Of a DNA stretch of 64,000 nt, positions 39,501 through 54,360 are shown piece by piece. The translations under genes were made by a program, and so were the position numbers. The DNA is from Camelus dromedarius (taxonomy: Eukaryota): assembly GCF_036321535.1 (NCBI RefSeq), contig NC_087449.1, positions 66,898,001 through 66,962,000 of the forward strand, given 5' to 3'. The notes under the pieces are model-generated. The model made no database searches and was not told the origin of the DNA. It saw nothing but the letters and a program-made list of their open reading frames with translations. How positions within the stretch are numbered: the first letter of the stretch is position 1; each line of letters starts with the position of its first letter.

Positions 39501-42500
39501 GGCCTAGTCAGGCAAACCCAAAATGCCTCCTGCCAAGTCCCTCCTGGGCTTGTCCCATCTGCCTCTGGGACCCGTGTCCCCAACTGTAGTACCAAGGGGG
39601 TGGACTCACGGACATCCAAGGACCCTGCAGCTCTGGAGTTTACAGTCCTGTCTAGGACAGTCTCCTGGGGGCCCCTCCCCGATGGCAGAGCAACAGAGAC
39701 CAGCACACTCCTGCCCACAAGGACCCGGGCTGGCCCCCAGGTACCTGTTCCGAGCGGTTCATGCAGTTCCGGGCTTCATGCTCTAGGAGGTTCTCCTTCC
39801 GAAAGTAACATTTTCCACATTTGGGACACTCGAAGGGTTTCTCCCCAGTGTGTTTCCTGCTGGGAGAATCCACAGGGGGTGTGGGGGCTGAGCAGAACTC
39901 CCTGCCCTCCCTCAGCCAGTGCCCCTTCTGATGCCCCGCTGCCAGGGCTGTGCTCCACGGCAGAGGAAGGACCTGACGTCGCCACCTGAGGATCAGTCAG
40001 ACTCCACTGGTGAACCTGCAGGGGTGAGCCCCGAAACCCTTCTCTCTTGTGCAGACTCTGCAGGGGAAAGGGCCACACAGCGTCATGCCGGAGGGGACAC
40101 CCTGGAGCCACCACACAGGCCAATGAGGAGGCCCAGCTGCCAGCATCTCCCCAAAGGCAGAAATAATCCTCAGGCCCTGACTCCCTGAAGAAACCACTCA
40201 GTCTCCCTGGAACTTCTGTGGGCTCTACCTTCAAAACCATGGCCAGAATCTGACCACTTCACCTCGCCTCCATATTACCACCCAGTGCAGCCACGCCATC
40301 CTCAGGCTCCTGTCTGGGCCTCCTAGCCTGTCTCGTGCTCCACACCTGCCTCCCAACAGGTTGTTGTTTTTTGTTTTTTGATTTTTTTTTTAATTGAAGT
40401 ACAGTCAGTTACAATGCATCAATTTCTGGCGTACAGCACAATGTCCCAGTCATGCATATACATACATATATTCGTTTTCGTATTCTTTTTCATTAAAGGT
40501 TATTACCAGATACTGAATGTAGTTCCCTGTGCTATACAGAAGAAACTTTTTAAAGTCTATTTTTATATATAATGGCTAACATTTGTAAATCTCAAACTCC
40601 CAAATTTATCCCTTCCCACTCTCTTTCCCCTCGTCACCATAAAATTATTTACTACGTCTGCGAGTCTGTTTCTATTTTGTAGATTTTTTTTTTGAATGGA
40701 GGTACTGGGAATTGAACCCAGGACCTTGCGCATGCTAAGAACACGCTCTACCACTGAGCTATACCCTTCCCAACCAACACACATGTTTTAACTTCAGGAG
40801 CCAGAGGGGCCCTTAAGTATGGTCGGATCTCATCACCTCTGCTCACAACCCTCTAAAGCTTTCCATCTCACCCTGAGAAAGGCCTGGGGGCCTATGAGGG
40901 TATTGCTGGCCTGCCCCGTACCTTGCCAGACTCAGTCCCCGGCCTGGCCTCCCTGCCAACCCAGAGGCTCTGCTCTGGCTCCTCTCAGGCCCAGAGCGCT
41001 CTCCCCAGCCATCCTCACTTCCTTTGAGTCTGCGGGACTTTCTTTAGAATCACAACCTGACCCCACCCTGAACTCCCCTGCCCTGGCCCTGCTGTCCTTC
41101 TCCTTTGTTCTGTGGCACTTCCAGTCCTTCATCACACTGCGAAGTCACTTATCTGGTAGTTCAGAGTCTCATTGCCCTGCTGGAAGGCAAGCTCCACAAG
41201 GCCTCTTTGTTCTGTTCACTAAGGTATCCCCAGTGCCCAGCTCCTGGCAGACAGCTCACTGAATGAACAAAATGAACCCTGACCTCAGAGCACGTGAGCG
41301 GCCCTGGGAGAGCTCTCACCGCCTGCCAGAGGCCACACACTCCTCTTATCCTCTGCTGCTACACTGACTGTCCTTGTCCCCCGTCCCAGTGACCGCAGGA
41401 GGCCATCACTCCCTCCCACTTCTCAGGGTCAGTCCAGCAGCCTGCAGCCCAAGGTAGGGTGAGGACTCTGCCTGCACCCGTGTCTTACACTGGGGGTGTG
41501 TCCAGGCAGACATGGACCACCGGATGGTGACTTCCCTGAAGACGCCACTGGCAGCAGCTGCCCCCAAGCAGGGAGAACAAACGGGCTTCACTCCCAATTC
41601 CAACCCTATTCGGTTGCCGGTGGCTTCCCAGAGCTTCATACTGAGAAAACGGGTATGGCGCAATCTGGCTTGGCAAGAAACAGCACAGCGGTGCACCAGT
41701 GATGTCTTGGGCCAGGGAGGGGCAGGACAGGGAGTCAAGTCACCTAGATGCCATTCCTGGAGGCCTTGCAGGGACTCTAGAGCAGCGCCGTCCAAGAGGA
41801 CCCTCTGGCATGATGGAAACCATCTGCCTCTGCTGTTGCATTTGGCAGGCAGGGGCCACATGTGGCCACCAAGCCCTTGAAATGCACCTAGCGTGTCTGA
41901 GGAACTGAACTTCTTTAATTTTAATAACTTCCAAGTTAAAATATCTTCGTGTGACATCTAATTACCTTATTGGACACTGCAGCTTTAGACAAATGGTCTT
42001 TAATGACACTGAGCTGACATCTCAGAGCTAACCTCTCCCCAGAAATGCAGGTGGCACCAACCCTAAAGATTGACGACTTCGCCCAAAGCCCACACTGCCA
42101 GGCTTTAGAAATACCTACGGTCAGGCCTCAGCCACAGCACAGAGCCACAGGCTTCTCTCATCCCCTGGGCAGAAGCCAGTTCGAGGTCAAGGTCCGCAGT
42201 GGGTGGAACCTGTTGATAAGGTCCACAAAGCCACTCCAAGGAGGAGGGGGAGGAAGAAGGAAGCCGACCAAGGTCAGGTTCTCACTTCCTGATGAGCAGA
42301 GGCCTGCTAACGTCAGGCACTACGTGGGTCTGAGATGGAGCCCCTGACCCCTACATGGCCCAGAAGTGGGGAATGCAGGCCCCCTCCCCCAACANNNNNN
42401 NNNNNNNNNNNNNNNNNNNNNNNNNNNNNNNNNNNNNNNNNNNNNNNNNNNNNNNNNNNNNNNNNNNNNNNNNNNNNNNNNNNNNNNNNNNNNNNNNNNN

Positions 42501-43840
42501 NNNNNNNNNNNNNNNNNNNNNNNNNNNNNNNNNNNNNNNNNNNNNAGGGAACCTGCGCTCAGGGCCGGCTCGGCAGCACAGGGCTTTCTGAGTACGTTCG
42601 CTTTCCTCCTGGCTGGCACAGTCTCAGTCTCAGAAACGTAATCGGCATCCCCGTCATCCTCAACTTGAACCACCACTTCCCACTAGAGCAGAATAGGCAG
42701 CAGGAGGGAGTGAGGTCACCAAATTAATCAGCAGGGGTTCTGGGGACAGATCGACAGGGCAGCCAGCTCCATCCAGGCCCATCCCAAGCCCCGACCCAGG
42801 CACATCCCTAGATAAGTCCCTTCATCCATGACTATTCCCTGGATGGTTCCAGGGCAGGCAGCATCCGCATCTTGGACTTGGAGGGCAATAGCTTTACTTG
42901 TGGGTAACTGGAAGTTTGTCTGGACTTCACTACCCTGGGGAAACTCTTGATGCTGCCCACTCCACCCCAAGAAGCCATGCCTCACAGAAAGGTCAGCCTG
43001 AGGCTGCAGGACAAAACCAGCTATATTTGGAGAAAACCTGTCCCAAACCCACAGAAGAGATTCTACCTTAGGGTCCAGATTATCCCAGGAAAGTGTCAGT
43101 CTCTTCTCTCCACTCCTGCCTCCCCCTTTCCAGCACCCTGAGCACAATACCTCATTACTCCCGCCCTGCAGCTGGACACCTTCAGCCTCAAAGGGCCTGG
43201 AGGGCACTTTGCAATCCTCAGACTCCTTGTCCTCAGGGGGACAAAGCTTCAGGGCCTGCCTGAGTTTCCCATGGAGGAAGGAGGGGCTCTCACACTGAGC
43301 AGGGAGACCAAGCTGAGGCCTCTGGGGGCTAAGACTGCTGCTGAGCTCCTGATCCTTGGGGACTTGACCCAGAGTCCTTGAAACTTCCTCTTCCTCCAAG
43401 CCTGAGGGCTCCTTGAGGTGGCTGTTCACATCCTGGGGGGCAGGTTTCCCCAGCCCACTCCGGACACTTGGCACCTGTCCCACTGAGGTTTTGGGCTTGA
43501 AGCTCTGGCACAGCTCTACAGCCTCAGGCACCCGCAGCTCCCTGGCTGCCAGAAGCACCTGATCCCGGTTCCCTGAGGTGAGGGCAAGGTGACCAGTGTA
43601 GAAAAAGTCCAACAGGAGGCCAAAGATCTCTGCAAAGCCAGCAGGGAGGACGACACTGCCCCCTGAGCCATCCCCGTAGAGACTCTGGAAGAAGTGGCTG
43701 CAGCAGGCCAAAACACTCCAGTGCGCCTTGAACACCAGGCCCCCCACATCCAGGGTGGCATCGCAGTATTGGCCCCTCTCCCGCTGCTTGTTGAGCTCCT
43801 GCAGAACCCTCACACTGTGCTGGACGAAGGAGCCGTCCAT
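36542..43840 (-). CDS. ZBTB48: Zinc finger and BTB domain-containing protein 48 (TZAP/HKR3), ~688 aa; coding exons 43840-43151, 42682-(~42441, end inside N-run), 39856-39745, 39128-39036, 38671-38585, 38371-38217, 37740-37604, 37531-37367, 37012-36924, 36838-36542
   Basis: [30 protein letters not shown] domain, then C2H2 fingers (ZF2-ZF11 visible) and C-terminal [12 protein letters not shown] arm. Visible splice sites are all GT-AG and in phase. The end of the second coding exon is inferred from orthologue length. Confidence 0.95.
40375..40683 (-). mobile_element. 5'-truncated artiodactyl/camelid-type L1 3' end
   Basis: poly-T, attgaagtacagtcagttacaatg...gttccctgtgctatacag...ctcccaaatttatccc; same family as 21323 and 62891. 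Confidence 0.75.
40684..40771 (-). mobile_element. tRNA-Ala-derived SINE head (short form) abutting the L1 fragment
   Basis: Reverse complement reads GGGAAGGGTATAGCTCAGTGGTAGAGCGTGTTCTTAGCATGCGCAAGGTCCTGGGTTCAATTCCCAGTACCTCC + A-run. Confidence 0.85.
41790..41985. mobile_element. MER3-like hAT-Charlie relic
   Basis: ggccacatgtggcc...ccttgaaatg...gaggaactgaacttctttaattttaat...ttattggacactgcag. Confidence 0.6.
42395..42545. other. N-run (151 nt) hiding ZBTB48 zinc finger 1 and its splice donor
   Basis: Directly visible; the reading frame enters the gap at ...EPALSAGS. Confidence 0.97.
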
Positions 43841-44229
43841 GGTCCGTCTGAAGGGGAGAAAGGCAGCAGTGACACCCTGGCCAGTCCAACTCAGAGGTGG
43901 CAAGCCCCTGGACTTGAGAAGAGGGAAAGGGGAGGAGAACTCTAATCAGTCACATTTATTACAACGAGGGCTTGGATCAAGGTTAGGGAATGCAAGGTGA
44001 GACAGGAACGAACTGAAAGCCTCTCTGGGAGCGGGGGGGTCAAGTAAGCAGCCCATACTTGGGGTGGCCAGAGAGCGTGGGTGGGAGGGGCGCAGGCGGA
44101 CTAGGTGGGGACAGGGTCGTGAAGGGGTGCTGGTGGGAGGAAATCAAAAGTTTGGGAAAAGAGGCGGGGGATCAGCCCGAACTTATCAGCCTGGCACAGC
44201 GAGACCAGAGCAAGGGAGGGAGGTGGCTG

Positions 44230-44988: not shown

Positions 44989-47900
44989 TCAGGTGGAGCC
45001 ACAGCGCCTGGTGTAGTCCTGGATGGAGGCCTGGAAGTGCTCCGTGCTGTTGAGTTCTGGGCGGCACAGGATCACATAGCACTTGGGGAGGAAGTAACCG
45101 CTGAAGTCGCCACTCAGGCAGCTCAGCGCGGCCAGCACGTTGACTGCAGGTAGATACTGGCCCTGGTAGACACTGGCCACTGTGAAGAAGGCAATCCAGG
45201 ACACAAAGTTGAGGAGCAGGCTGAAGGTGACACATTTTGCCTCGTTGTAGTTCTCTGGCAGGTCCTTGCCCAGGTAGCTGCAGGCAAAGGCGCTGACAGA
45301 GAGGAGGCCATTGTAGGCAAAAGCCAGCATGAATCCCAGTGAGTTAGCCTCTGTGCAATCTAGCACCACCAGCTGAGGGAAGCGCTGGTATTCCCTGGTG
45401 GGCAGTGGGGTCCACACTGCAAACCAAATTAGACAGATAAGCAGCTGGACTGTCGAGCTGATCACCACAAACAGGCCAGCACCATGGTTTTGGACCCACG
45501 CACGGAAGAAGGTGGGTACCTTGGCAGAAAACTTGAAGATGAAGACAAGTTGGAAGGAGCGGATTGTCAGGCAGGACAAGAAGATGGCAAAACCGAGGGC
45601 AAAGAGGCCTTGGCGCAGCAAGCATGTGGGCCACGTGGGTTCCCCAAAGAAGCCATAGAGGCCCAAGCTGCCCCCTGCCAGGGAGCCCAGCATGAGGAAG
45701 CACAGTCTGCCCCCAGCTGACTTCACCACGGGGGTGTCTAGGTGCCAGGCAAACAGGCCAGCAGTCCCAGCCACCACCACGAGCAGCAGCGTATTAGCTG
45801 CCAACAGGACCAAAGAGATGGGCTCATGCCAAGTCAAAAACACCACAGTGCGTGGGAAGCAGGTCTGGCTTCCCTCAGGTGCCCACTCTTCTTTCCCGCA
45901 AGGCTGGCAGCGGTAGAAGTCTGGAAGGAAAGGCAGAGAGGTTCCTGAGAGGCAGGTGAGCACAGCAGGAATGGGGGAGGGAGGCTGTGCAAGCCTGCCA
46001 GGTGCTGTGAGGGCTGTACCACAGGAGCTGGGCTCTGCCAGGCACGGCAAGAAGGGGGCAGCCCTGAATGGGGGCCCCGAGGCCACGGGCTTCCTCAAAA
46101 TGCCTGTGTTAATTACAGTTTACAGAGACACTTGTGTAGGTTCTGCTTGACTCATGGTCCCAGAAGGGTTTGCAAACCAAGAGCCTTACCCTGTAGCTCT
46201 GCCCACAAACCAGTGAGGCAATGATCCTATGGGAGTAGCCAACCCAAAGGGAAGGGCATTTTCATCTCTCCCTGGTGCTGCCACTAACCACATCCCCCTT
46301 CCTGAGCTGCCACGCTGTGGTTTCTCTGAGTTGACTCTATGCCCAAAGAGACAGTAAAAGGGAAGCATGTGGCCCCTGGCGTCCAGCTCTGGGCTGAAGC
46401 CTTAGCCACCTCAGTTTGGCCTCTGATCTTGACCCTGCATCACTTTTTTCCTCTTCTCTTTAAAATGTTTTTGCAGAGAGGTAATTAGATTTATTTATTA
46501 ATTTTTTAAAAGGAGGGACTGGGGATCGAACCCAGGACCTCGTGCATACCAGGCATATGCTCTACCACTGAGCTATACCCTCCCACCCTGCATCACTTTT
46601 TTTTCTGTTGCAGACATGCTACTATCTGCCTTTAGGCCAAGCTCTTCAAGATGCTGCTTGTCTTTGGCATGGACGCCAGAAGGGACTTCATACAGATAGC
46701 AGGAGAGGGCACAAAGGGAACAATAGCTACATCTGTTTGGATTAAGAGGTTGAAATAGGAAAAAATTGCCTCTGTAGGCATTGCGTTGAGAGCTCGCTAA
46801 TAAAGGACACAGCTAGGACTGAGGCCATCAATTGGTTGTTTCTGCTTGATGTGACTTCAGTCTGATGGAAGGTGTCCTCCAACCTGTCCCTGACTGGCAG
46901 CAAAGTGACCAGGGCCCTGGTTCTGCACATGTGTGGCCTGAGAGAGGTCCTTTCTTCTATTCTGCAGATCCTTGGAGTCCTGGGAGGTTTGCCCACTCAC
47001 CGTTTGGTCACTCACCACTCTTGTTGAGGAAGGTCCCGGCCTCACAGGGCACACACTCAAAGCAACAGTGGTGGAAACCCCAAACCACTCTCTGGTGCCC
47101 TTCAAGACAGTCGCTGGAACACACAGACTTAGGCACCTGCAAGAAACCACAGGTGTTATGCAAGCATGTGGAGGGGCCCAGGTCAAGGACATGCACATGT
47201 GGGATGGAAAACTGGATCTCTGTGTATCCGCCCTCACGGCTCACTCCCAGGGCAGAGCCTCTAGTTGTATGAACCAGCAGCAACTGGACATCTGTCTGTG
47301 AGCCTAGGGGCCTTCCCTGGCAGGGCTGCATAGAGGCAGAGCAGCCTTGGAACCTGGGCTCCCCTCTCCTGCTCTGTGTCAGAGTGTCCCCAGGCTCCAG
47401 GCTGCCCATCAGGCAGTCACCTGGTGAGTGACCACGTCCCCATTACCTGGTTGTCCTTTCCATGCCACTGGATTTTGGTTGTATTTATGTCTAGCCGAGC
47501 TGGGGATGATGTGGAGGAGCCAATGACCCTGAAGGTCCATTCGGGGCCATTCCATTCCCAGGCAATTATGTCATAGCCACCAAGGGGGTCCCCGTTGTCT
47601 TTAAATATCACATTGTGCTTGTGTAGGAGGAAATTCACCTTGCGGATATGCTCCAGAAGCTGAGACAAACAGGGAGGACAGAGCAGCTGTAGATGACACA
47701 CGGGCTGCTCCCCGTGGACACTCCCAGCCCGACAGCCCAGGAAGCGGGTGTGTGGGGCCTTGCTGGGCTTCTCTCTGCCTGGTTTCAGCCTTTCTGGAAG
47801 TTCTGGTCCCTTCCTCAGGCCCCCTCCCCTCCTAGGAGGCCCCTTGACCCTCCCGACCAGCCTCTTGAGAGAGAGCAAGCCTCTTAACAAAGGAGCCCTT

Positions 47901-50900
47901 GACAGCAACTTTCAGCCCTGGATTTGAGGCATGGTGGGTGGGAGGGGCCACGATTCAGAAAAGCGAGGACTAAGAGGAGCCTCAGAGAAGGAATCAGCTC
48001 TCTAGTTGGGGGCCTTTGCCCCCCAATCCCAGGCACTTCGGGTCACCAAAGAGTGGCCATTCTTCTTGCTTCAGGAAGACTCCCTGATACGGAGTGCCAG
48101 TGGCAGGACCGCCTTACCTGCCAGGGGTGGACTCGGCCCCCAGCACAGGCGCCAGAGCCGCAGCCCAGGAGCTGATGGAGGCCGTGGGCCACGGCGTAGA
48201 CGGCCTGGTACGCGTTGTAGGCAGAGCTCATGGAGAACTTTCCAAGTCTGGGCATCTCTGTGAAAGCCCAACACTCTCTACAGACCTGGTTGCTGCCGCA
48301 CCAGGAGCCCCTGGGGCAGGGCCCGAGGGTTCCTTTGTCTGCCCGGACATAAGCCTCTTCAAACTCCTTCAGGCCAGGGACAAGCCTCTGCGGGATGGAC
48401 ACGCCCAGCACCGAGCCGATGCCCTGGATACCGGGCACACTGCTGATGTGTCTGGAGATGGACCAGTCTTCCGAGGCGATCCACACCTTGGCAGTCAGGT
48501 TGGCCAGCACCACAGACTCGAAGAACACCCTGGCCAGCTGCCTGCCGGAGAAAACCACCACGACCGTGGTCCCCGCTTGAGCCAGGTGGCGCATCATGCT
48601 CTGCATCCTCTCGTCACCCGGCCGGGCAGAGAATGGCACAATGTCCTTGAAGGCAACACAGATGCCCTGCTGGGTGGCCCGGCCCTCCAGCGCCTGCACC
48701 CCGAGCTGCCCGTAGTCGCCCTCGCTGCCCACCATGGAGATCCAGACCCAGCCGAACCTCTGCAGCAGCAGCACCAAGATCTCCACCTGGAGCTCATCAC
48801 TGGGGATGGTGCGCAGGAAGGAGGGGTACCGCCGCTTCATGCTGAGTATCACGCTGCTGGCATCGTAGCTGACCTGTGGGGGTTCAGTTCAGCAACTTCA
48901 GTGGCATTAGCCTCGACTCAGGGCTGGCCTTGAGCTGGGTGCGGTGACCCGGAAGGCTGGACACAAGGTCCTGGCCCGGGTTCTCACTACTCGACAGTCC
49001 CGGCCCAGGTTCTCACTACTCGACATGGGAGGCTAACAAGTTACATATGGGGAAGGGGGTAGGTCTCAAGGGAGACTTCTGGGCGTGGGATGGGAATCTG
49101 TCCCCGGGACAAAGGGAACTAAACCTGCATGCAGGGGCTGAGATGGTATGTGTGTGGGGTCCTTTAGGGACTTGCAGGTCAGTTCCAGGAAGAAGAAGAG
49201 CATGAGCACATGTGTCTGGTCTGGGCAGGAAGCCTTAGCTCTCAGGCTACAAGGCTGGGGTTTTATCCGAAGGCCTTAAAGAGCCCCTAAGGGTTTAGGC
49301 AGAGAAGTGGCATCAGACTTGTGTTTTAGGAGTGTATCTCTGATTTCAGTGAGGAACGTGTTTAAGAAGGCTCAAGGCCAGAGTCAAGGACCTCCCAGAG
49401 ACCTCCTGGGAGCTGATGGAATCATCTGGAAGAGAGAGGATGGTGTGAGTGAAATCTGCCGAGGCCATGGCTGTAGAGAACGGGGGTGGAGTCGGCAGTG
49501 GTTACAAGGGCCCCGTGGCAGAGGGCGTGGAGACGGGCTAGACTGCAGGGGCAGGGAAGGGTGTGTAGGTAGTGCTGCAGAGTTTCTGGCTGCCTTAGGG
49601 ATGGTCACTCTGCCAGATGGGCTGGGGTAGGGATGCAAGGAGAAAAGAGGCTTTTGTTCCGTAGGGAGGTAAGTTCAGTTTGGGGCCTGCTTGGTCCTTG
49701 AACTGGGGGCGCAGGTTGAGCATCTGGAAATGAGTCTGGTGCTCAGAAGTCAGAAGGAAGGTAGAGAAGGGAAGGGGAAGTTCAGCAGGGGGTCTTGGCC
49801 AGCCTGGGAAGGGGAGGGGTCTGCTCTAGGGAATCACTGCCTTCTGGGGAAGGGGTACACAGGAGTGGGGGCAGAATTCTCTAAAGGAAACCAGAAACAA
49901 GTGAAAGAGGGGGTCATAAATGCAGAGGGAAAACTGTCAAAATGATAAAATGGATTGGAGACCTAGGGTTAGACCCCCTAGACCTAGACCACTGGGGCAG
50001 GTACTGAGGAGCGGTAACCACCTAGACCTACAGGCCCTCTGCCAGCCCTCCTCAGCAAGACCTTGCCGGTTCTGCCTCTGAGATTGCCACTTGAACCACA
50101 TCCAATCCCTACCAACCTGCAGTCGCCACCCTCAAGCATTGGCCAGAAGGGCAGAACCCAGGGCAGTGGGTGGAGGAGCAGGTAAAAAGAGGGAGAAGCA
50201 AACCGGATGGAGTCTGGCTGGAAAGAGGGCAGAGGGAGTCCAGGCTGAGAGTAGAGGTGCCTGGAGGATGGAGGGGGATGAGGCAAGCAGGTGGGCTGAG
50301 GAGGAAGCCCAGGGAGAGGTGGACGAGCAGAGGAAGGGGTGAGAACCAGAGGGACAGGACTGGCCCGCACAGGGAGGGGCACCACACCTCTAAGCCTGGA
50401 GGGAGGGGAGCAGAGAGGTGGGAGGAGAGCAGGGAGATGTGAAGTTTGCAGGGTGGGAGATGTGAAGTTCATGGGGTGGGAAATGAAGGGTGTTCAGTTC
50501 TGCACAAAGGTGATGGGACAGTGGGAGGAGTGAGAGGGGCAGAAGTTTCCAGGGAGAATGGATTTGCCAGGCAGCATTGAAGCAGGGAGATCTGGAGCAG
50601 CACTTGGAGAGGAAGGAACACTGGGGCAGGTACCTAAGGAGCGGTGACCGCCCAGGAGATCCAGGGGTCCAGACTGGCCTCGGGCACAGCAACTCTGTCC
50701 ACCCACCCCAGCCCACCCTGGACTTGCCTGGAGGGGCAATGAGCGAACTGCCGGGGCCCCAGCTCACCAGGGGCACCAGGAAGGGACTCAGCAGGGCTGC
50801 CGTGGTGGTGACATGGGTGGTGGTGTCAGGCCCAATCACCGCCAGGGTCATGGGGGAAGAGTGGGCGGGGTTTCCTGGGATCTCCACGCGATGTGTCCCC

Positions 50901-52891
50901 AGCGTGCTCAGGATGCTCAGCGTGGCATACACGTTGGCTGACTCCGAGCACACGTCATACAGCTGGTACCCCAGGGTGACATTGGGCAGCAGGGTGGTGG
51001 AGTTGTTTATCTCCTCAATGCCGAACCGCACGGCCTGGAAGAGGTGGTAGCCGTGGCCGTTGAAGTTGTTGGACCTAGAGGGAAAGCCAAGCCGAGAGCT
51101 GAGAAAGGCAAGGCCCCACCGAAACCCTGGCTTCCTGGAACCCCAGGACGGGGTGGGGGGGTGGAGAGAAAGGAAACTCTGGGTCATCTGTCCAGTCCCC
51201 AGAACCATGATCTCAACATGGGCTCCGTAGTGCATACACAGTTCTGGTAACAGGCGTTTGAAGAAGTGGGGGACAAGCTGGAGAAATACACACGACATAT
51301 CCTCCCAACACACACAGGCGTGTTAGCACTGAAAGTCTCACACGTCCTGTAGGAGAGAAACCTGTCGTATTAGGGTTCTCCAGAGAAACAAAGCCAAGAT
51401 GAGGTACATAAATATATGTACACAGAGAGAGAGCGAAAAAGAGTTTTTATTTAAGGAACTGGCTCGTGTGATAGTGGGGGCTGGCAAGTCCGAGAATTGC
51501 AGGGCAGGCTGGAAATTCCCACAAGAGTTTGCGTTGCAGTCTTGAGGCTGAAGGTAGAAATCCTTCCTCAATCTTGTCTCTTAAGGTCTTCAACTGATGG
51601 GATGTGGCCCACCTATATCCTGGAGGACCATTTGCTCTACTTAGTCTATTGATCTAAATGTTAACCATGTCTAAAAATGCCTTCACAGCAACATCTAGAC
51701 TGGTTTTAAGCCAACAACTGGGCACCATACCCTAGCCGAGCTGACAGATGAAATTAACCATGGCACCTGCTTTACCTCGTTTGACCAGAACTTTTCACTG
51801 GGACTCTCGTGACTGTGGTGAGGGCCTGTGTTCCTGATGGCCTCTCTGGGAAACACTGACAGGGGTGCTCTGGAGACATGATTTAGCCCTGCCTGAAGAG
51901 TGTGCTAGCCTGCTGTGCTATTGTTCCTGTCACTCTGTCCTTGAGTCCTGCCCATGACAGCCCTTCAGTTATCTGAAGCCAATTTTCATCTGTCACCTCC
52001 TCCCTCAAGTCTCCCCTCTAACTAGGCTCCCATCTGTGGCTCTTTGGGCCAGTCTTCCTGCACCAGGCGTTCCAAAACCTTCCTCCTGGGCTGGCTGTCA
52101 GGTGTGCGTCCTATTCAGGGCCTCCTATGTTGAGCCCTGATAACATACTCAAGCCACCCAGATCTATGACTTGCACAGATGGCAAGCAACTCTCTTCTTT
52201 ATAAGAAAAGCAGTTGTTTTTTCCTACCTAGACCGTCGAGTTCATGAAGGCACCAACCTAATTTATCTTTGCTAATCTCCGGGAGCATCTACTGCTATGT
52301 GTGCCCACTTCCTTCCTCCTAGAGAACCATACTTGCCATCTGGGAGACTTAAGGAGTGTGAATTCAGGGAGGAACCAGGAGGAGATGGAAGAGGGGAAAG
52401 GCCACCCTTGCTTAATCCTTGCCATCTACTTACACCACAAAGCCAGGAAATAACCGACATGGAATTATAATACAAACAGCCAGGACAAAGTAGTGTATTA
52501 CAAAATGGAAACTGGGCAAAAATGCCAGGAACGGTCTAGCCAGCACTTGAGGGTGGCAACTGCAGGCTGGGGAGGGACTGGAGGCGGTTCAGATGGTAAC
52601 CCCAGAGGCAGAACCGGCAAGGTCTTGCTGAAGAGGGCTGGCAGAGGGCCCTGTAAGCACAGGTCCCCCTCGGTGACGGTTCTGCTGACCCCTCACTCAC
52701 CTGTCACAGAAGGTCACCGTGGGTCTGCGTCTCACCCCTGGATAGTCACTGTGGAGAGGGAACAGGCCTGCAACAAGGTAGTCCCCAGGGAGGCTGAAGT
52801 CGGGAGACGACGTGGTGCTTTGGCAGTTGAAGGCCCAGCAGCAGGACAGGGAAAGCTGCAGGCTGACCAGGTACGTCTCCCACAGTAACAT
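44989..52891 (-). CDS. TAS1R1: Taste receptor type 1 member 1 (umami subunit, class C GPCR), intact, 839 aa; coding exons 52891-52701, 51074-50768, 48873-48118, 47659-47447, 47136-47016, 45920-44989
   Basis: Exon lengths 191+307+756+213+121+932=2520 nt, GT-AG, no frameshift or internal stop. Signal peptide, Venus flytrap domain ([13 protein letters not shown]; [16 protein letters not shown]; YPSFLRT), Cys-rich domain ([11 protein letters not shown]...CCFECVPC) and 7TM ending [11 protein letters not shown]. Confidence 0.97.
46450..46584 (-). mobile_element. tRNA-Ala-derived camelid SINE (Vic-1-like) in TAS1R1 intron 5
   Basis: Head GGGAGGGTATAGCTCAGTGGTAGAGC...GGTTCGATCCCCAG on minus; perfect 18-bp TSD ACCCTGCATCACTTTTTT at 46432-46449 and 46585-46602. 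Confidence 0.9.
49190..49960 (-). mobile_element. LINE-2 fragments in TAS1R1 intron 2
   Basis: ggggttttatcc...gagcccctaagggtttaggcagagaagtggcatcagacttgtgttttagg; aagttcagtttgggg...gagtctggtgctcag. Confidence 0.55.
50029..50147. repeat. Arm B of an inverted repeat (partner 52535-52655)
   Basis: Hand alignment with the reverse complement of 52535-52655 gives 103/121 identities. Confidence 0.9.
51363..51765 (-). mobile_element. MLT2-type (ERVL) solo LTR in TAS1R1 intron 1
   Basis: tg...tagggttctccagagaaac...aaggaactggctcgtgtgat...ggcccacc...cacagcaacatctagactgg...gaaattaaccatggca, with TG...CA termini. Confidence 0.75.
52535..52655. repeat. Arm A of an inverted repeat (partner 50029-50147), 46 nt inside TAS1R1 intron 1
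   Basis: Core 52603-52650 matches arm B at 47/48. Confidence 0.9.
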
Positions 52892-52899
52892 GCTGGCCA

Positions 52900-54360
52900 G
52901 ACGGTCCTGCACTTGGCATGGCCGAGCTGCCCACTCTGACAGGGTCGGGCTCTTTAAATAGAATGGCCGGCAGCTGCCCAGATGCTTCCCAGCTTCGTGC
53001 CTTGGAAAGGGGAGGGACTGGAGCCCAGTTGTTGGAGTTGTAGGGCTGTTTGCCTTGGCCTTCCGGGCCTGCGGTCCTACTCAGGAACTGAGCAGGGTGA
53101 AAACACAGGTGCCAACCAGGCGGCACCCCTGACCCTTCCTCTGGATGGTTGTGGGTTCTGTCCTTGCTCTGGTGCCTGTGGCTTCACCTGGCTCAGAAAG
53201 GGAGCCCTGGTATTTTGGGGAGGCGGAGGGAGGCGGGGACTCAGCTTCCCTGGGGGCTCTGAGGAACAGAATGTGGAAGGCTGCCATCAAGGAGCTGCGG
53301 GTTTTAGAACCTTTGACCTGGGCCTCAGTTTACCGAATGAGACAGGCTTTGAGTTAAACTCGTACACAGCCCGCCACCCCAACCCCCAAGTCCTCAAATA
53401 GAAATCATCCTGAGTGAATCACCCTGGCTTGGCCTTGTGACACAGGGTCGCTCCCTTCAGCTCAGAGACAAATGCATGCAAACGGAGGGTATGCAAATAG
53501 GCCGATTTTGTTTAAAACGTCAGTCCTGGAGCTTTTTCTGCAGGAAAAAATAAATCCTAGGTGGATTTCCGGAGAGATGGCCCTGGATTCGCGGTATCTG
53601 ACTTTCCCTCTCGAGGCGGCCGGGGTGGAGCTTTTGCATAATGTAAATCGAGCCCCCTAATCTCCCCCCGCTGGCGGCCTCCTCCTCGGAGAGGCAGGCA
53701 GAGGCCCGCGTGCGCTGCCGAGGCCGCCGGCAGAGGGCGCCCGCGGCTCCTGGGCCGCTGGTCGGGCCGCGGGGCGGAGCGACGGGATCTCGCGGGATTC
53801 TCGCGCGGCAGGGGCCGGCAGCCAGCATGGCGGACTCGGTGCTGCTGCTCAAGCGGGGTCCTTCCCGCTCCACGTGGCTGCGGGCCCGCAAGGCCCGGCC
53901 CCAGCTCATCCTTAGCCACCGGCCCCGCCGCCGGCTCTGGACCCTGCGCTGGTGCGGCCGAAGGCGCCTTCGGCGGCGGCTGCTGCAGGCCCAGGCGGCC
54001 GGCGCGGACTGGCGGGAGGGCGGCTGCCTGGTGTCGCGCGCGCCGGCGGCCCGGAGGCCCAAGACCGGGGCCCGCAGCCCGGCCCTCAGCCCGGCCCCAG
54101 AGGCGGCCCCGGCCTCGAGTTGTGCTGCGATCCTTCCCATTCCGCCGGTGCGGCCGGCCGGCCCGGGCCGCGCCTTGTTGCTGCTGCCGCTCGGCCAGGT
54201 GGGTCGCGCCGGGGAATCCGGGCGGGCAGAGAAGGAGGGGTGGAGTGACAGCCCCAGAGCTGCCGGCCGGGAGAGGACTGCGTGCCCCCGCTGGTTCTCG
54301 AACCGCAAGCCGGGCTCGTTCCTCGGCCGGTGGTGCTGAGTAGGGTAACGAGGACCCTCC
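52900..54360. promoter_or_regulatory. Divergent TAS1R1/NOL9 promoter region: TATA-like TATTTAAA on minus (52960-52953), octamer cluster (53472-53648), CGCG-type elements (53788-53808), NOL9 CpG island
   Basis: The two ATGs (52891 minus, 53827 plus) are 936 bp apart, head-to-head; motifs read directly. Confidence 0.75.

What the first reader, a model, noticed from the sequence alone, without database searches (positions are those of the whole stretch)
50029..52655. Inverted repeat brackets TAS1R1 exon 2, with mismatches skewed toward G-U pairs in the pre-mRNA
Seen: 52535-52655 (start of intron 1, 46 nt from the exon-1 donor) and 50029-50147 (intron 2, ~620 nt past the exon-2 donor) are reverse complements. 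My hand alignment gives 103/121 identity (16 substitutions, 2 gaps), with a 48-bp core at 47/48. Of 14 transitions, 11 form G-U wobble pairs in the TAS1R1-sense RNA and only 3 in the opposite strand (one-sided binomial ~0.03, post hoc). I do not recognise the arms as a common transposon. Established: complementary intronic sequences flanking an exon promote exon skipping, back-splicing to circRNA, and ADAR editing. Inference: the pre-mRNA may fold a ~120-bp stem that loops out the 307-nt exon 2. Skipping would frameshift (phase 2 joined to phase 0) and trigger NMD, or yield a 307-nt circRNA, giving a post-transcriptional dial on umami-receptor output.
Basis: partly seen in the sequence, partly recalled or inferred. 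Interest (0 to 1): 0.72.

Follow-up and report, generated by a model that had tools for sequence, protein, structure and literature searches.

The report
Old inverted intron copy flanking TAS1R1 exon 2
The 120-base inverted repeat around exon 2 of the camel umami-receptor gene is real, but it is a roughly 60-million-year-old backwards copy of the start of intron 1 that has decayed or broken in pig, hippo and cattle, and nothing shows it is kept to control splicing.

Summary
Arms 50029-50147 and 52535-52655 are reverse complements at 103/121, with a 47/48 core. They mismatch at 16 substitutions, 14 of them transitions: 11 are G-U in the TAS1R1-sense RNA and 3 in the antisense RNA.

The arms are not copies of a multi-copy transposon. 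Arm B is ancestral intron-1 sequence, found directly after exon 1 in alpaca, cattle, deer, hippo, pig, horse, lynx and aye-aye. Arm A exists only in cetartiodactyls. It sits where horse, lynx and aye-aye share a different ancestral sequence. It is therefore a local inverted copy made in the cetartiodactyl stem.

Thermodynamically, the camel pre-mRNA would form the stem: 114 of 121 arm-B bases pair with arm A, worth about -178 kcal/mol.

Evolution gives no support for selection on pairing:
- Pig arm B is split by a 1258-nt transposon.
- Hippo arm A has lost its core.
- Ruminant arms are down to about 70% Watson-Crick pairing.
- Compensatory-like double changes are at chance level (3 of 20, p=0.54).
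- The G-U skew is also seen in horse and lynx arm B, which have no partner arm.

Verdict: a real, datable, probably neutral reverse-complementary match. A splicing effect is plausible but untested.

The parts
52535..52655 (-). Arm B: the 5' arm in the TAS1R1 pre-mRNA, nt +46 to +166 of intron 1. It is ancestral intron sequence and the source of the copy.
   Evidence: for the repeat. Orthologous copies lie directly after exon 1 in Camelus ferus (100%), Vicugna (97.5%), Hippo (83.6%/116), Equus (81.7%/109), Bos (76%/125), Dama (76.9%/121), Lynx (partial), Sus (split) and Daubentonia (75%/81).
50029..50147 (-). Arm A: the 3' arm in the pre-mRNA, in intron 2, 620 nt past the exon-2 donor and 1155 nt before the exon-3 acceptor. 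It is the inverted copy of arm B.
   Evidence: Present at the same place only in Camelus, Vicugna, Bos, Dama, Hippo (with an internal deletion) and Sus (about 70%). Equus, Lynx and Daubentonia carry a different, mutually homologous sequence there.
50768..51074 (-). TAS1R1 exon 2 (307 nt), enclosed by the two arms.
   Evidence: AG acceptor and GT donor read. The translation matches TAS1R1. 82-100% identical to exon 2 of eight other mammals.
52701..52891 (-). TAS1R1 exon 1 coding part (ATG at 52891, 191 nt, ends in phase 2).
   Evidence: ORF. Donor CAG|GTGAGT read.
48118..48873 (-). TAS1R1 exon 3 (756 nt, phase 0). It would be joined to exon 1 if exon 2 were skipped.
   Evidence: Splice sites read. 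ORF.
50148..50616 (-). Pyrimidine-rich (sense strand) ancestral intron-2 sequence between exon 2 and arm A. It is not part of the copy.
   Evidence: Orthologous in Equus (72%/479), Lynx (71%/407), Hippo, Bos, Dama and Sus.
49988..50026 (-). Camelid-only second copy of a 40-nt intron-2 segment (first copy at 50617-50656). It abuts arm A.
   Evidence: 34/40 identical. The second copy is absent in Bos, Hippo, Sus, Equus and Lynx.

Best explanation
The repeat is a locus-specific inverted micro-duplication. In the stem lineage of Cetartiodactyla, about 120 nt from the very start of TAS1R1 intron 1 (arm B) were copied backwards into intron 2. The copy replaced about 90 nt of older sequence, most likely during repair of a break by template switching. 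That mechanism is inferred.

Since then the two copies have drifted essentially neutrally. In camels, where few changes have accumulated on either arm, they are still 85% complementary, or about 93% if G-U pairs are counted. The sense pre-mRNA can therefore in principle fold a stem of about 120 bp that loops out exon 2. That makes it a potential reverse-complementary match for exon-2 circularisation, exon skipping or A-to-I editing. There is no sign that this potential has been maintained by selection, and no sign yet that it is realised.
For: Origin:
- Arm B is orthologous across nine mammals, including a primate, always directly after exon 1.
- Arm A is found only in cetartiodactyls, at one fixed site.
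- That site holds another sequence shared by horse, lynx and aye-aye.
- Arm A shares states with cetartiodactyl arm B (CAGC-AAGACC, GCCGGTT) that horse and lynx lack. It also keeps horse-like states (TTGCCACTTGAAC) that cetartiodactyl arm B later changed.
- The ML tree groups all cetartiodactyl A and B copies apart from horse, lynx and aye-aye, but with weak support, 69/78.
- There are no further copies in the 64-kb window.

Neutral drift:
- Pig arm B is split by a 1258-nt insertion with a 14-nt target duplication. Hippo arm A has lost 32-40 nt of the core.
- Watson-Crick pairing within species is camel 83%, alpaca 82.5%, cattle 70%, deer 68%, hippo 73%, pig 69%.
- Sense-strand duplex energy falls from -229.5 kcal/mol in camel to -149 (cattle), -139 (hippo) and -117 (pig).
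- Orthologous divergence of the arms equals that of flanking intron: camel-cattle 24% and 20% against 23.8%, camel-alpaca 2.5% and 0.8% against 2.6%.
- Same-branch double changes are 3 of 20 against 13.9% expected, p=0.54.

Folding potential:
- In the minimum-energy fold of 3013 nt of sense RNA, 114 of 121 arm-B bases pair with arm A. Forcing arm A single-stranded costs 178 kcal/mol.
Against: Three weak signals point the other way.

(1) Transition events that would turn a Watson-Crick pair into G-U in the sense RNA outnumber those giving A-C by 43:23 over all cetartiodactyl arm branches (p about 0.02). Flanking intron shows 213:210.

(2) Camel arms differ less than expected from flank rates: 16-20 differences against about 29 expected (Poisson p = 0.05 for the 20 counted; about 0.01 by my own estimate for 16). 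Cattle arms differ more than expected, 35 against 27.

(3) Both camelid arms carry the same derived T>C at one column, which is either a compensatory pair or a gene conversion.

None of these survives correction for post-hoc testing. Signal (1) is also present where no partner arm exists. Genome-wide copy number of the arms could not be measured.
Confidence: 0.72

Rival explanations
1. The stem works in camelids. Pairing of the two arms in the pre-mRNA measurably promotes exon-2 back-splicing (a 307-nt circRNA) and/or exon-2 skipping (frameshift, then nonsense-mediated decay). It thereby lowers productive TAS1R1 mRNA, either as a selected regulator or as an unselected side effect.
For: - The stem dominates the predicted fold.
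- The sense-strand duplex is stronger than the antisense one, -229.5 against -200.8 kcal/mol.
- Reverse-complementary matches much shorter than this drive both back-splicing and skipping in experiments (PMC8330042).
- Camel arms are less diverged than flank rates predict.
- There is a G-U-type excess of 43:23.
- There is one compensatory-like double change in camelids.
- Tas1r1 is transcribed, with regulated intron retention, in mouse round spermatids (PMC12918597).
- RNA runs from reproductive tissue hold words of this locus.
Against: - No RNA junction data exist for this locus.
- The repeat is broken in pig and hippo and eroded in ruminants, so it has no conserved role.
- Covariation is at chance level.
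- The G-U skew also appears in arm B of species without arm A.
- Intron 1 may be spliced before arm A is transcribed, about 2.4 kb later. This point is inference.
Confidence: 0.2
2. The two arms are independent insertions of an uncharacterised low-copy interspersed repeat, not a local duplication.
For: No repeat library or whole-genome search was available, so copy number outside the window and the ten loci is unknown. Arm A appeared as a discrete block of about 120 nt.
Against: - Arm B is at least as old as the primate-laurasiatherian split, while arm A is cetartiodactyl-only. Even so, arm A carries states derived in the cetartiodactyl arm-B lineage.
- No third copy exists in 64 kb of window or elsewhere in ten 10-15-kb orthologous loci.
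- The arm A insertion site shows no target-site duplication and no poly(A) or terminal repeats.
- Rfam gives no match.
Confidence: 0.05
3. The high identity in camelids is kept by occasional gene conversion between the arms, without any RNA-level function.
For: - A 47/48 core sits beside a remainder that is about 77% identical.
- Both arms have retained a CpG (GCCGGTT) that decayed in hippo arm B and cattle arm A.
- There is one shared derived T>C in both camelid arms.
- Divergence is lower than expected.
Against: - The core equals the inferred ancestral sequence rather than a shared derived one, which points to few mutations rather than homogenisation.
- 120 bp is short for mammalian gene conversion. 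This is general knowledge and was not tested here.
- Only one shared derived site was found.
Confidence: 0.1

Closest known systems
Non-repetitive reverse-complementary matches (RCMs) flanking circularised or skipped exons, e.g. the C. elegans zip-2 RCM (PMC8330042)
   Same: Unique, non-transposon complementary sequences in the two introns flanking a single exon. They are predicted to bring its splice sites together.
   Different: The zip-2 RCM is 13 nt, conserved across nematodes, and shown by deletion to be required for both circRNA and skipping. Here the match is about 120 nt, is not conserved as a pair, and no circRNA or skipped transcript has been observed.
Inverted Alu or SINE pairs (IRAlus) in flanking introns of circRNA exons and ADAR substrates (general knowledge)
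   Same: Long imperfect intronic dsRNA spanning an exon. Same expected consequences: back-splicing, skipping and A-to-I editing.
   Different: The arms here are not members of a dispersed repeat family. One is native intron sequence and the other its local inverted copy.
Mouse Sry locus, where locus-specific inverted repeats flank the exon that forms the Sry circRNA (general knowledge)
   Same: A locus-specific inverted duplication, not a transposon, surrounds the circularised exon.
   Different: The Sry arms are many kilobases long and nearly identical, and the circRNA is documented. Here the arms are 120 nt at 85% identity and the product is hypothetical.
   Same: A short piece of conserved intron copied backwards into the neighbouring intron so that it brackets exon 2. 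The follow-up found no evidence of a splicing effect.
   Different: That copy is reported as camelid-only and 74 bp at 92% identity. This one is older (all cetartiodactyls) and longer. I did not re-check that note.

Membership tests
Intronic reverse-complementary match (RCM) flanking an exon | Significant reverse complementarity between the upstream and downstream intron of the same exon | tested here: met
   103/121, E about 1e-33. The arms lie in intron 1 and intron 2 of TAS1R1.
Intronic reverse-complementary match (RCM) flanking an exon | The arms pair with each other in the predicted fold of the pre-mRNA rather than with local competitors | tested here: met
   114 of 121 arm-B bases pair with arm A in the MFE of 3013 nt. 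ddG is -178 kcal/mol.
circRNA-producing or exon-skipping RCM (functional) | A back-splice junction or exon 1-exon 3 junction is observed in RNA | not testable with these tools
All RNA holders are contigs that also hold intron words. No literature on it.
circRNA-producing or exon-skipping RCM (functional) | Pairing conserved or compensated across species | tested here: not met
   Pig arm B is split, hippo arm A core is deleted, and ruminants are at 68-70% Watson-Crick pairing. Same-branch double changes are 3 of 20 against 13.9% expected.
Interspersed repeat (transposon-derived) inverted pair | Further copies elsewhere; insertion hallmarks (target-site duplication, poly(A), terminal repeats) | tested here: inconclusive
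   No other copy in 64 kb or elsewhere in ten orthologous loci, and no hallmarks at the arm A junctions. A genome-wide count was not possible.
Local inverted segmental micro-duplication | One copy orthologous in outgroups, the other absent from the orthologous empty site, and the copy nested within the source lineage | tested here: met
   Arm B is present in horse, lynx and aye-aye. The arm A site is occupied by a different shared sequence in those three. Shared derived states link A to cetartiodactyl B. Tree support is weak, 69/78.

The most novel reading that the evidence does not exclude
In camelids, and only there, the stem has been kept nearly intact because it controls TAS1R1 output. Pairing of a native intron-1 segment with its 60-million-year-old inverted copy would loop out exon 2 and divert transcripts into a 307-nt circRNA or a frameshifted exon 1-3 mRNA. 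The excess of G-U-preserving substitutions and the unusually low divergence of the camel arms would then be footprints of selection on an RNA duplex.
Probability: 0.07. Interest if true: 0.7.

Novelty: new member of a known kind. Interest (0 to 1): 0.3.

Why it matters
If the stem acts in camels, it would be a cleanly dated, non-transposon example of how a small repair accident creates a circRNA or exon-skipping switch in a sensory receptor gene. Natural 'knock-outs' in pig (arm split by a transposon) and hippo (arm core deleted) would serve for comparison. As it stands, it mainly shows that long exon-flanking inverted repeats can be neutral relics. It also shows that a G-U skew among about 14 mismatches is not evidence of RNA-level selection. 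Together with the KCNK7 note, it suggests that local inverted micro-duplications in introns recur in this genome.

Tried and rejected
RNA evidence:
There is therefore no junction, editing or copy-number evidence.

Other searches that found nothing:
- Rfam scans of both arms found nothing meaningful.
- blastn of the arms and of the neighbouring block against the window found no third copy and no extension of the homology.
- The pig isoform P0251 was not on record.
- Galemys (L009) was too diverged to align either arm.
- A search for TAS1R1 circRNA papers gave only an unrelated mouse testis study.

Ideas considered and rejected:
- The 40-nt direct repeat plus arm A plus the purine-rich (plus-strand) block are one inserted unit. 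Rejected because the block is ancestral in horse and lynx, and the second 40-nt copy is camelid-only.
- Transcription-associated mutation bias fully explains the skew. Rejected because flanking intron is balanced, 213:210.
- An apparent excess of covarying columns in pairwise comparisons. It disappeared when all parallel changes on the tree were counted.

Caveat: the multiple alignment misplaces the first 12 nt or so of hippo arm A, which adds a few false events on that branch.
Full report
**1. The observation**

The repeat finder reports two adjoining inverted repeats, 50033-50113/52570-52650 and 50112-50147/52535-52570. A local alignment joins them into one match. It runs from 50029-50147 to the reverse complement of 52535-52655, with 103 of 121 identical and two one-base gaps. 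It stops sharply at both ends. The core is 47/48.

There are 16 substitutions, 14 of them transitions. Eleven are G-U in the minus-strand (TAS1R1-sense) RNA and three in the plus-strand RNA. RNAduplex gives -229.5 kcal/mol for the sense strand and -200.8 for the antisense strand.

The gene geometry is as stated:
- Exon 1 coding part is 52701-52891 (191 nt, phase 2).
- Exon 2 is 50768-51074 (307 nt).
- Exon 3 is 48118-48873 (phase 0).
- Arm B starts 46 nt into intron 1.
- Arm A starts 620 nt after the exon-2 donor.

The window is 99.5-99.8% identical to Camelus ferus and 97% to alpaca, so it is a Camelus genome.

**2. What the arms are**

No third copy exists in the 64-kb window, and Rfam finds nothing.

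I fetched orthologous TAS1R1 loci through protein look-ups:
- A 50%-representative search with the exon-6 ORF gave a bovine TAS1R1 isoform.
- That isoform retrieved named TAS1R1 proteins of many mammals.
- Their genes were fetched for Camelus ferus, Bos, Hippopotamus, Equus, Lynx, Vicugna, Sus, Dama, Galemys and Daubentonia.

Arm B is found directly after exon 1 in every species that can be aligned, including horse (81.7% over 109 nt), lynx (partial) and the aye-aye (75% over 81 nt). It is therefore ancestral intron-1 sequence, older than the primate-laurasiatherian split.

Arm A is found only in camelids, cattle, deer, hippo and pig, always at the same place in intron 2. At that place horse and lynx carry a different stretch of about 90 nt. 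The horse stretch aligns to the aye-aye (69% over 189 nt), so the arm-free state is ancestral. The pyrimidine-rich intron segment between exon 2 and arm A is ancestral too.

In the joint alignment:
- Arm A shares states with cetartiodactyl arm B that horse and lynx lack (CAGC-AAGACC, GCCGGTT).
- Arm A keeps horse-like states (TTGCCACTTGAAC) where cetartiodactyl arm B later changed.

An ML tree puts all cetartiodactyl A and B copies on one side of horse, lynx and aye-aye, with weak support of 69/78.

The simplest reading is a single event in the cetartiodactyl stem. About 120 nt of intron 1 were copied in inverted orientation into intron 2, replacing about 90 nt. The mechanism (break repair with template switching) is inferred. 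The 85% identity fits that age.

**3. Is the pairing maintained?**

State of the pair in each species:

| Species | Watson-Crick pairing within species | Sense duplex energy (kcal/mol) | Structural damage |
|---|---|---|---|
| Camel | 83% | -229.5 | none |
| Alpaca | 82.5% | -228 | none |
| Cattle | 70% | -149 | none |
| Deer | 68% | -149 | none |
| Hippo | 73% of what is left | -139 | arm A has lost 32-40 nt, exactly the part that is the 47/48 core in camel |
| Pig | 69% | -117 | arm B split by a 1258-nt transposon insertion with a 14-nt target duplication |

Between species the arms diverge like the flanking intron:
- Camel-cattle: 24% and 20% in the arms against 23.8% in the flanks.
- Camel-alpaca: 2.5% and 0.8% in the arms against 2.6% in the flanks.

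Pairwise comparisons first suggested several covarying columns. I then placed all substitutions on the species tree by parsimony. Only 3 of 20 cases where both arms acquired the same base lay on corresponding branches. That compares with 13.9% expected from branch event frequencies (p=0.54). Homologous hypermutable sites such as CpG explain such parallel changes.

**4. The G-U skew**

I polarised the camel mismatches with the other copies. The 11 G-U sites come from sense-strand C>T (8) and A>G (3) changes. Two of them are one CpG that decayed in opposite directions in the two arms, so they are not independent.

Counts of G-U-type against A-C-type events:
- All cetartiodactyl arm branches: 43:23, p about 0.02.
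- Branches independent of the camel path: 32:20, p=0.13.
- Arm A alone: 19:14.
- Horse and lynx arm B, which have no partner arm: 9:4.
- Flanking intron: 213:210.

Because the flanks are balanced, a general transcription-linked bias does not explain the skew. However, the skew sits mostly in arm B and is present without a partner. I therefore read it as a local property of that C-rich, promoter-proximal segment, or as chance, and not as selection for pairing.

One residual oddity remains. The camel arms differ at 16-20 sites where flank rates predict about 29. Cattle arms differ at 35 where 27 are predicted.

**5. What it could do**

In the minimum-energy fold of 3013 nt of sense pre-mRNA (exon 1 to just past arm A), 114 of 121 arm-B bases pair with arm A. 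Forbidding arm A from pairing costs 178 kcal/mol. For this fold, places 51363-51402 were masked.

[quoted passage not shown] The proposed effect is therefore mechanistically reasonable. Skipping exon 2 would indeed shift the frame.

Nothing shows that it happens:
- The single reads call was lost.
- The RNA runs that hold this locus (reproductive-tract libraries) also hold most intron words. They could be unspliced RNA or DNA carry-over.
- No paper reports a TAS1R1 circRNA.

A mouse study reports Tas1r1 transcripts with regulated intron retention in round spermatids (PMC12918597). Germ-line and testis tissue would be the place to look.

**6. Verdict**

The feature is real and its origin is now clear: a locus-specific inverted copy, not a transposon pair. 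Its evolutionary record is that of a neutral relic. It happens to be best preserved in camelids.

I give about 0.2 to a measurable splicing effect in camels. I give about 0.07 to a selected regulatory role.

I did not re-test that note.

Noticed in passing
L002:1692-1796 (Bos), compared with window 52701-52772: Cattle carry a tandem duplication of about 105 nt covering the last 72 nt of TAS1R1 exon 1 plus the first intron bases. There are therefore two candidate exon-1 donors, and arm B lies after the second one.
   Followed up: partly
window 49988-50026 and 50617-50656: A 40-nt direct repeat (34/40) in intron 2. The second copy abuts arm A and is present only in camelids, so it is a separate, later small duplication.
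   Followed up: partly
L007:1796-3053 (Sus scrofa): A 1258-nt composite transposon insertion with a poly(T) head and a SINE-like tail splits pig arm B. It is flanked by the 14-nt target duplication GGGTTACTATTT(G/A)A.
   Followed up: partly
L003:4590-4740 (Hippopotamus): Hippo arm A has an internal deletion of 32-40 nt. A tRNA-derived SINE-like element lies about 40 nt downstream of it.
   Followed up: partly
window 47900-53100: RNA-seq libraries labelled reproductive-system metagenome, from three studies, hold 34-81% of the sampled 31-mers of this mostly intronic 5.2-kb stretch. That suggests unspliced TAS1R1 RNA or DNA carry-over.
   Followed up: no
window 48118-48873 (exon 3) and protein list: 587-aa TAS1R1 isoforms lacking about 254 residues (by size, exon 3) are annotated in dozens of mammals. 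So are 770-aa forms lacking about 71 residues (by size, probably exon 4). In-frame exon skipping thus appears widespread in this gene and does not depend on the repeat.
   Followed up: no
window 50432-50477: A tandem pair of a 23-nt unit (83% identical) lies inside the purine-rich (plus-strand) part of intron 2.
   Followed up: no
window about 42380-42560: A run of N (446 N in the window in total) lies about 170 nt below the BTB-domain ORF (42728-43903, ZBTB48 by its place in the orthologous loci).
   Followed up: no
window 51363-51402: This place in intron 1 tripped the reads filter.
   Followed up: no
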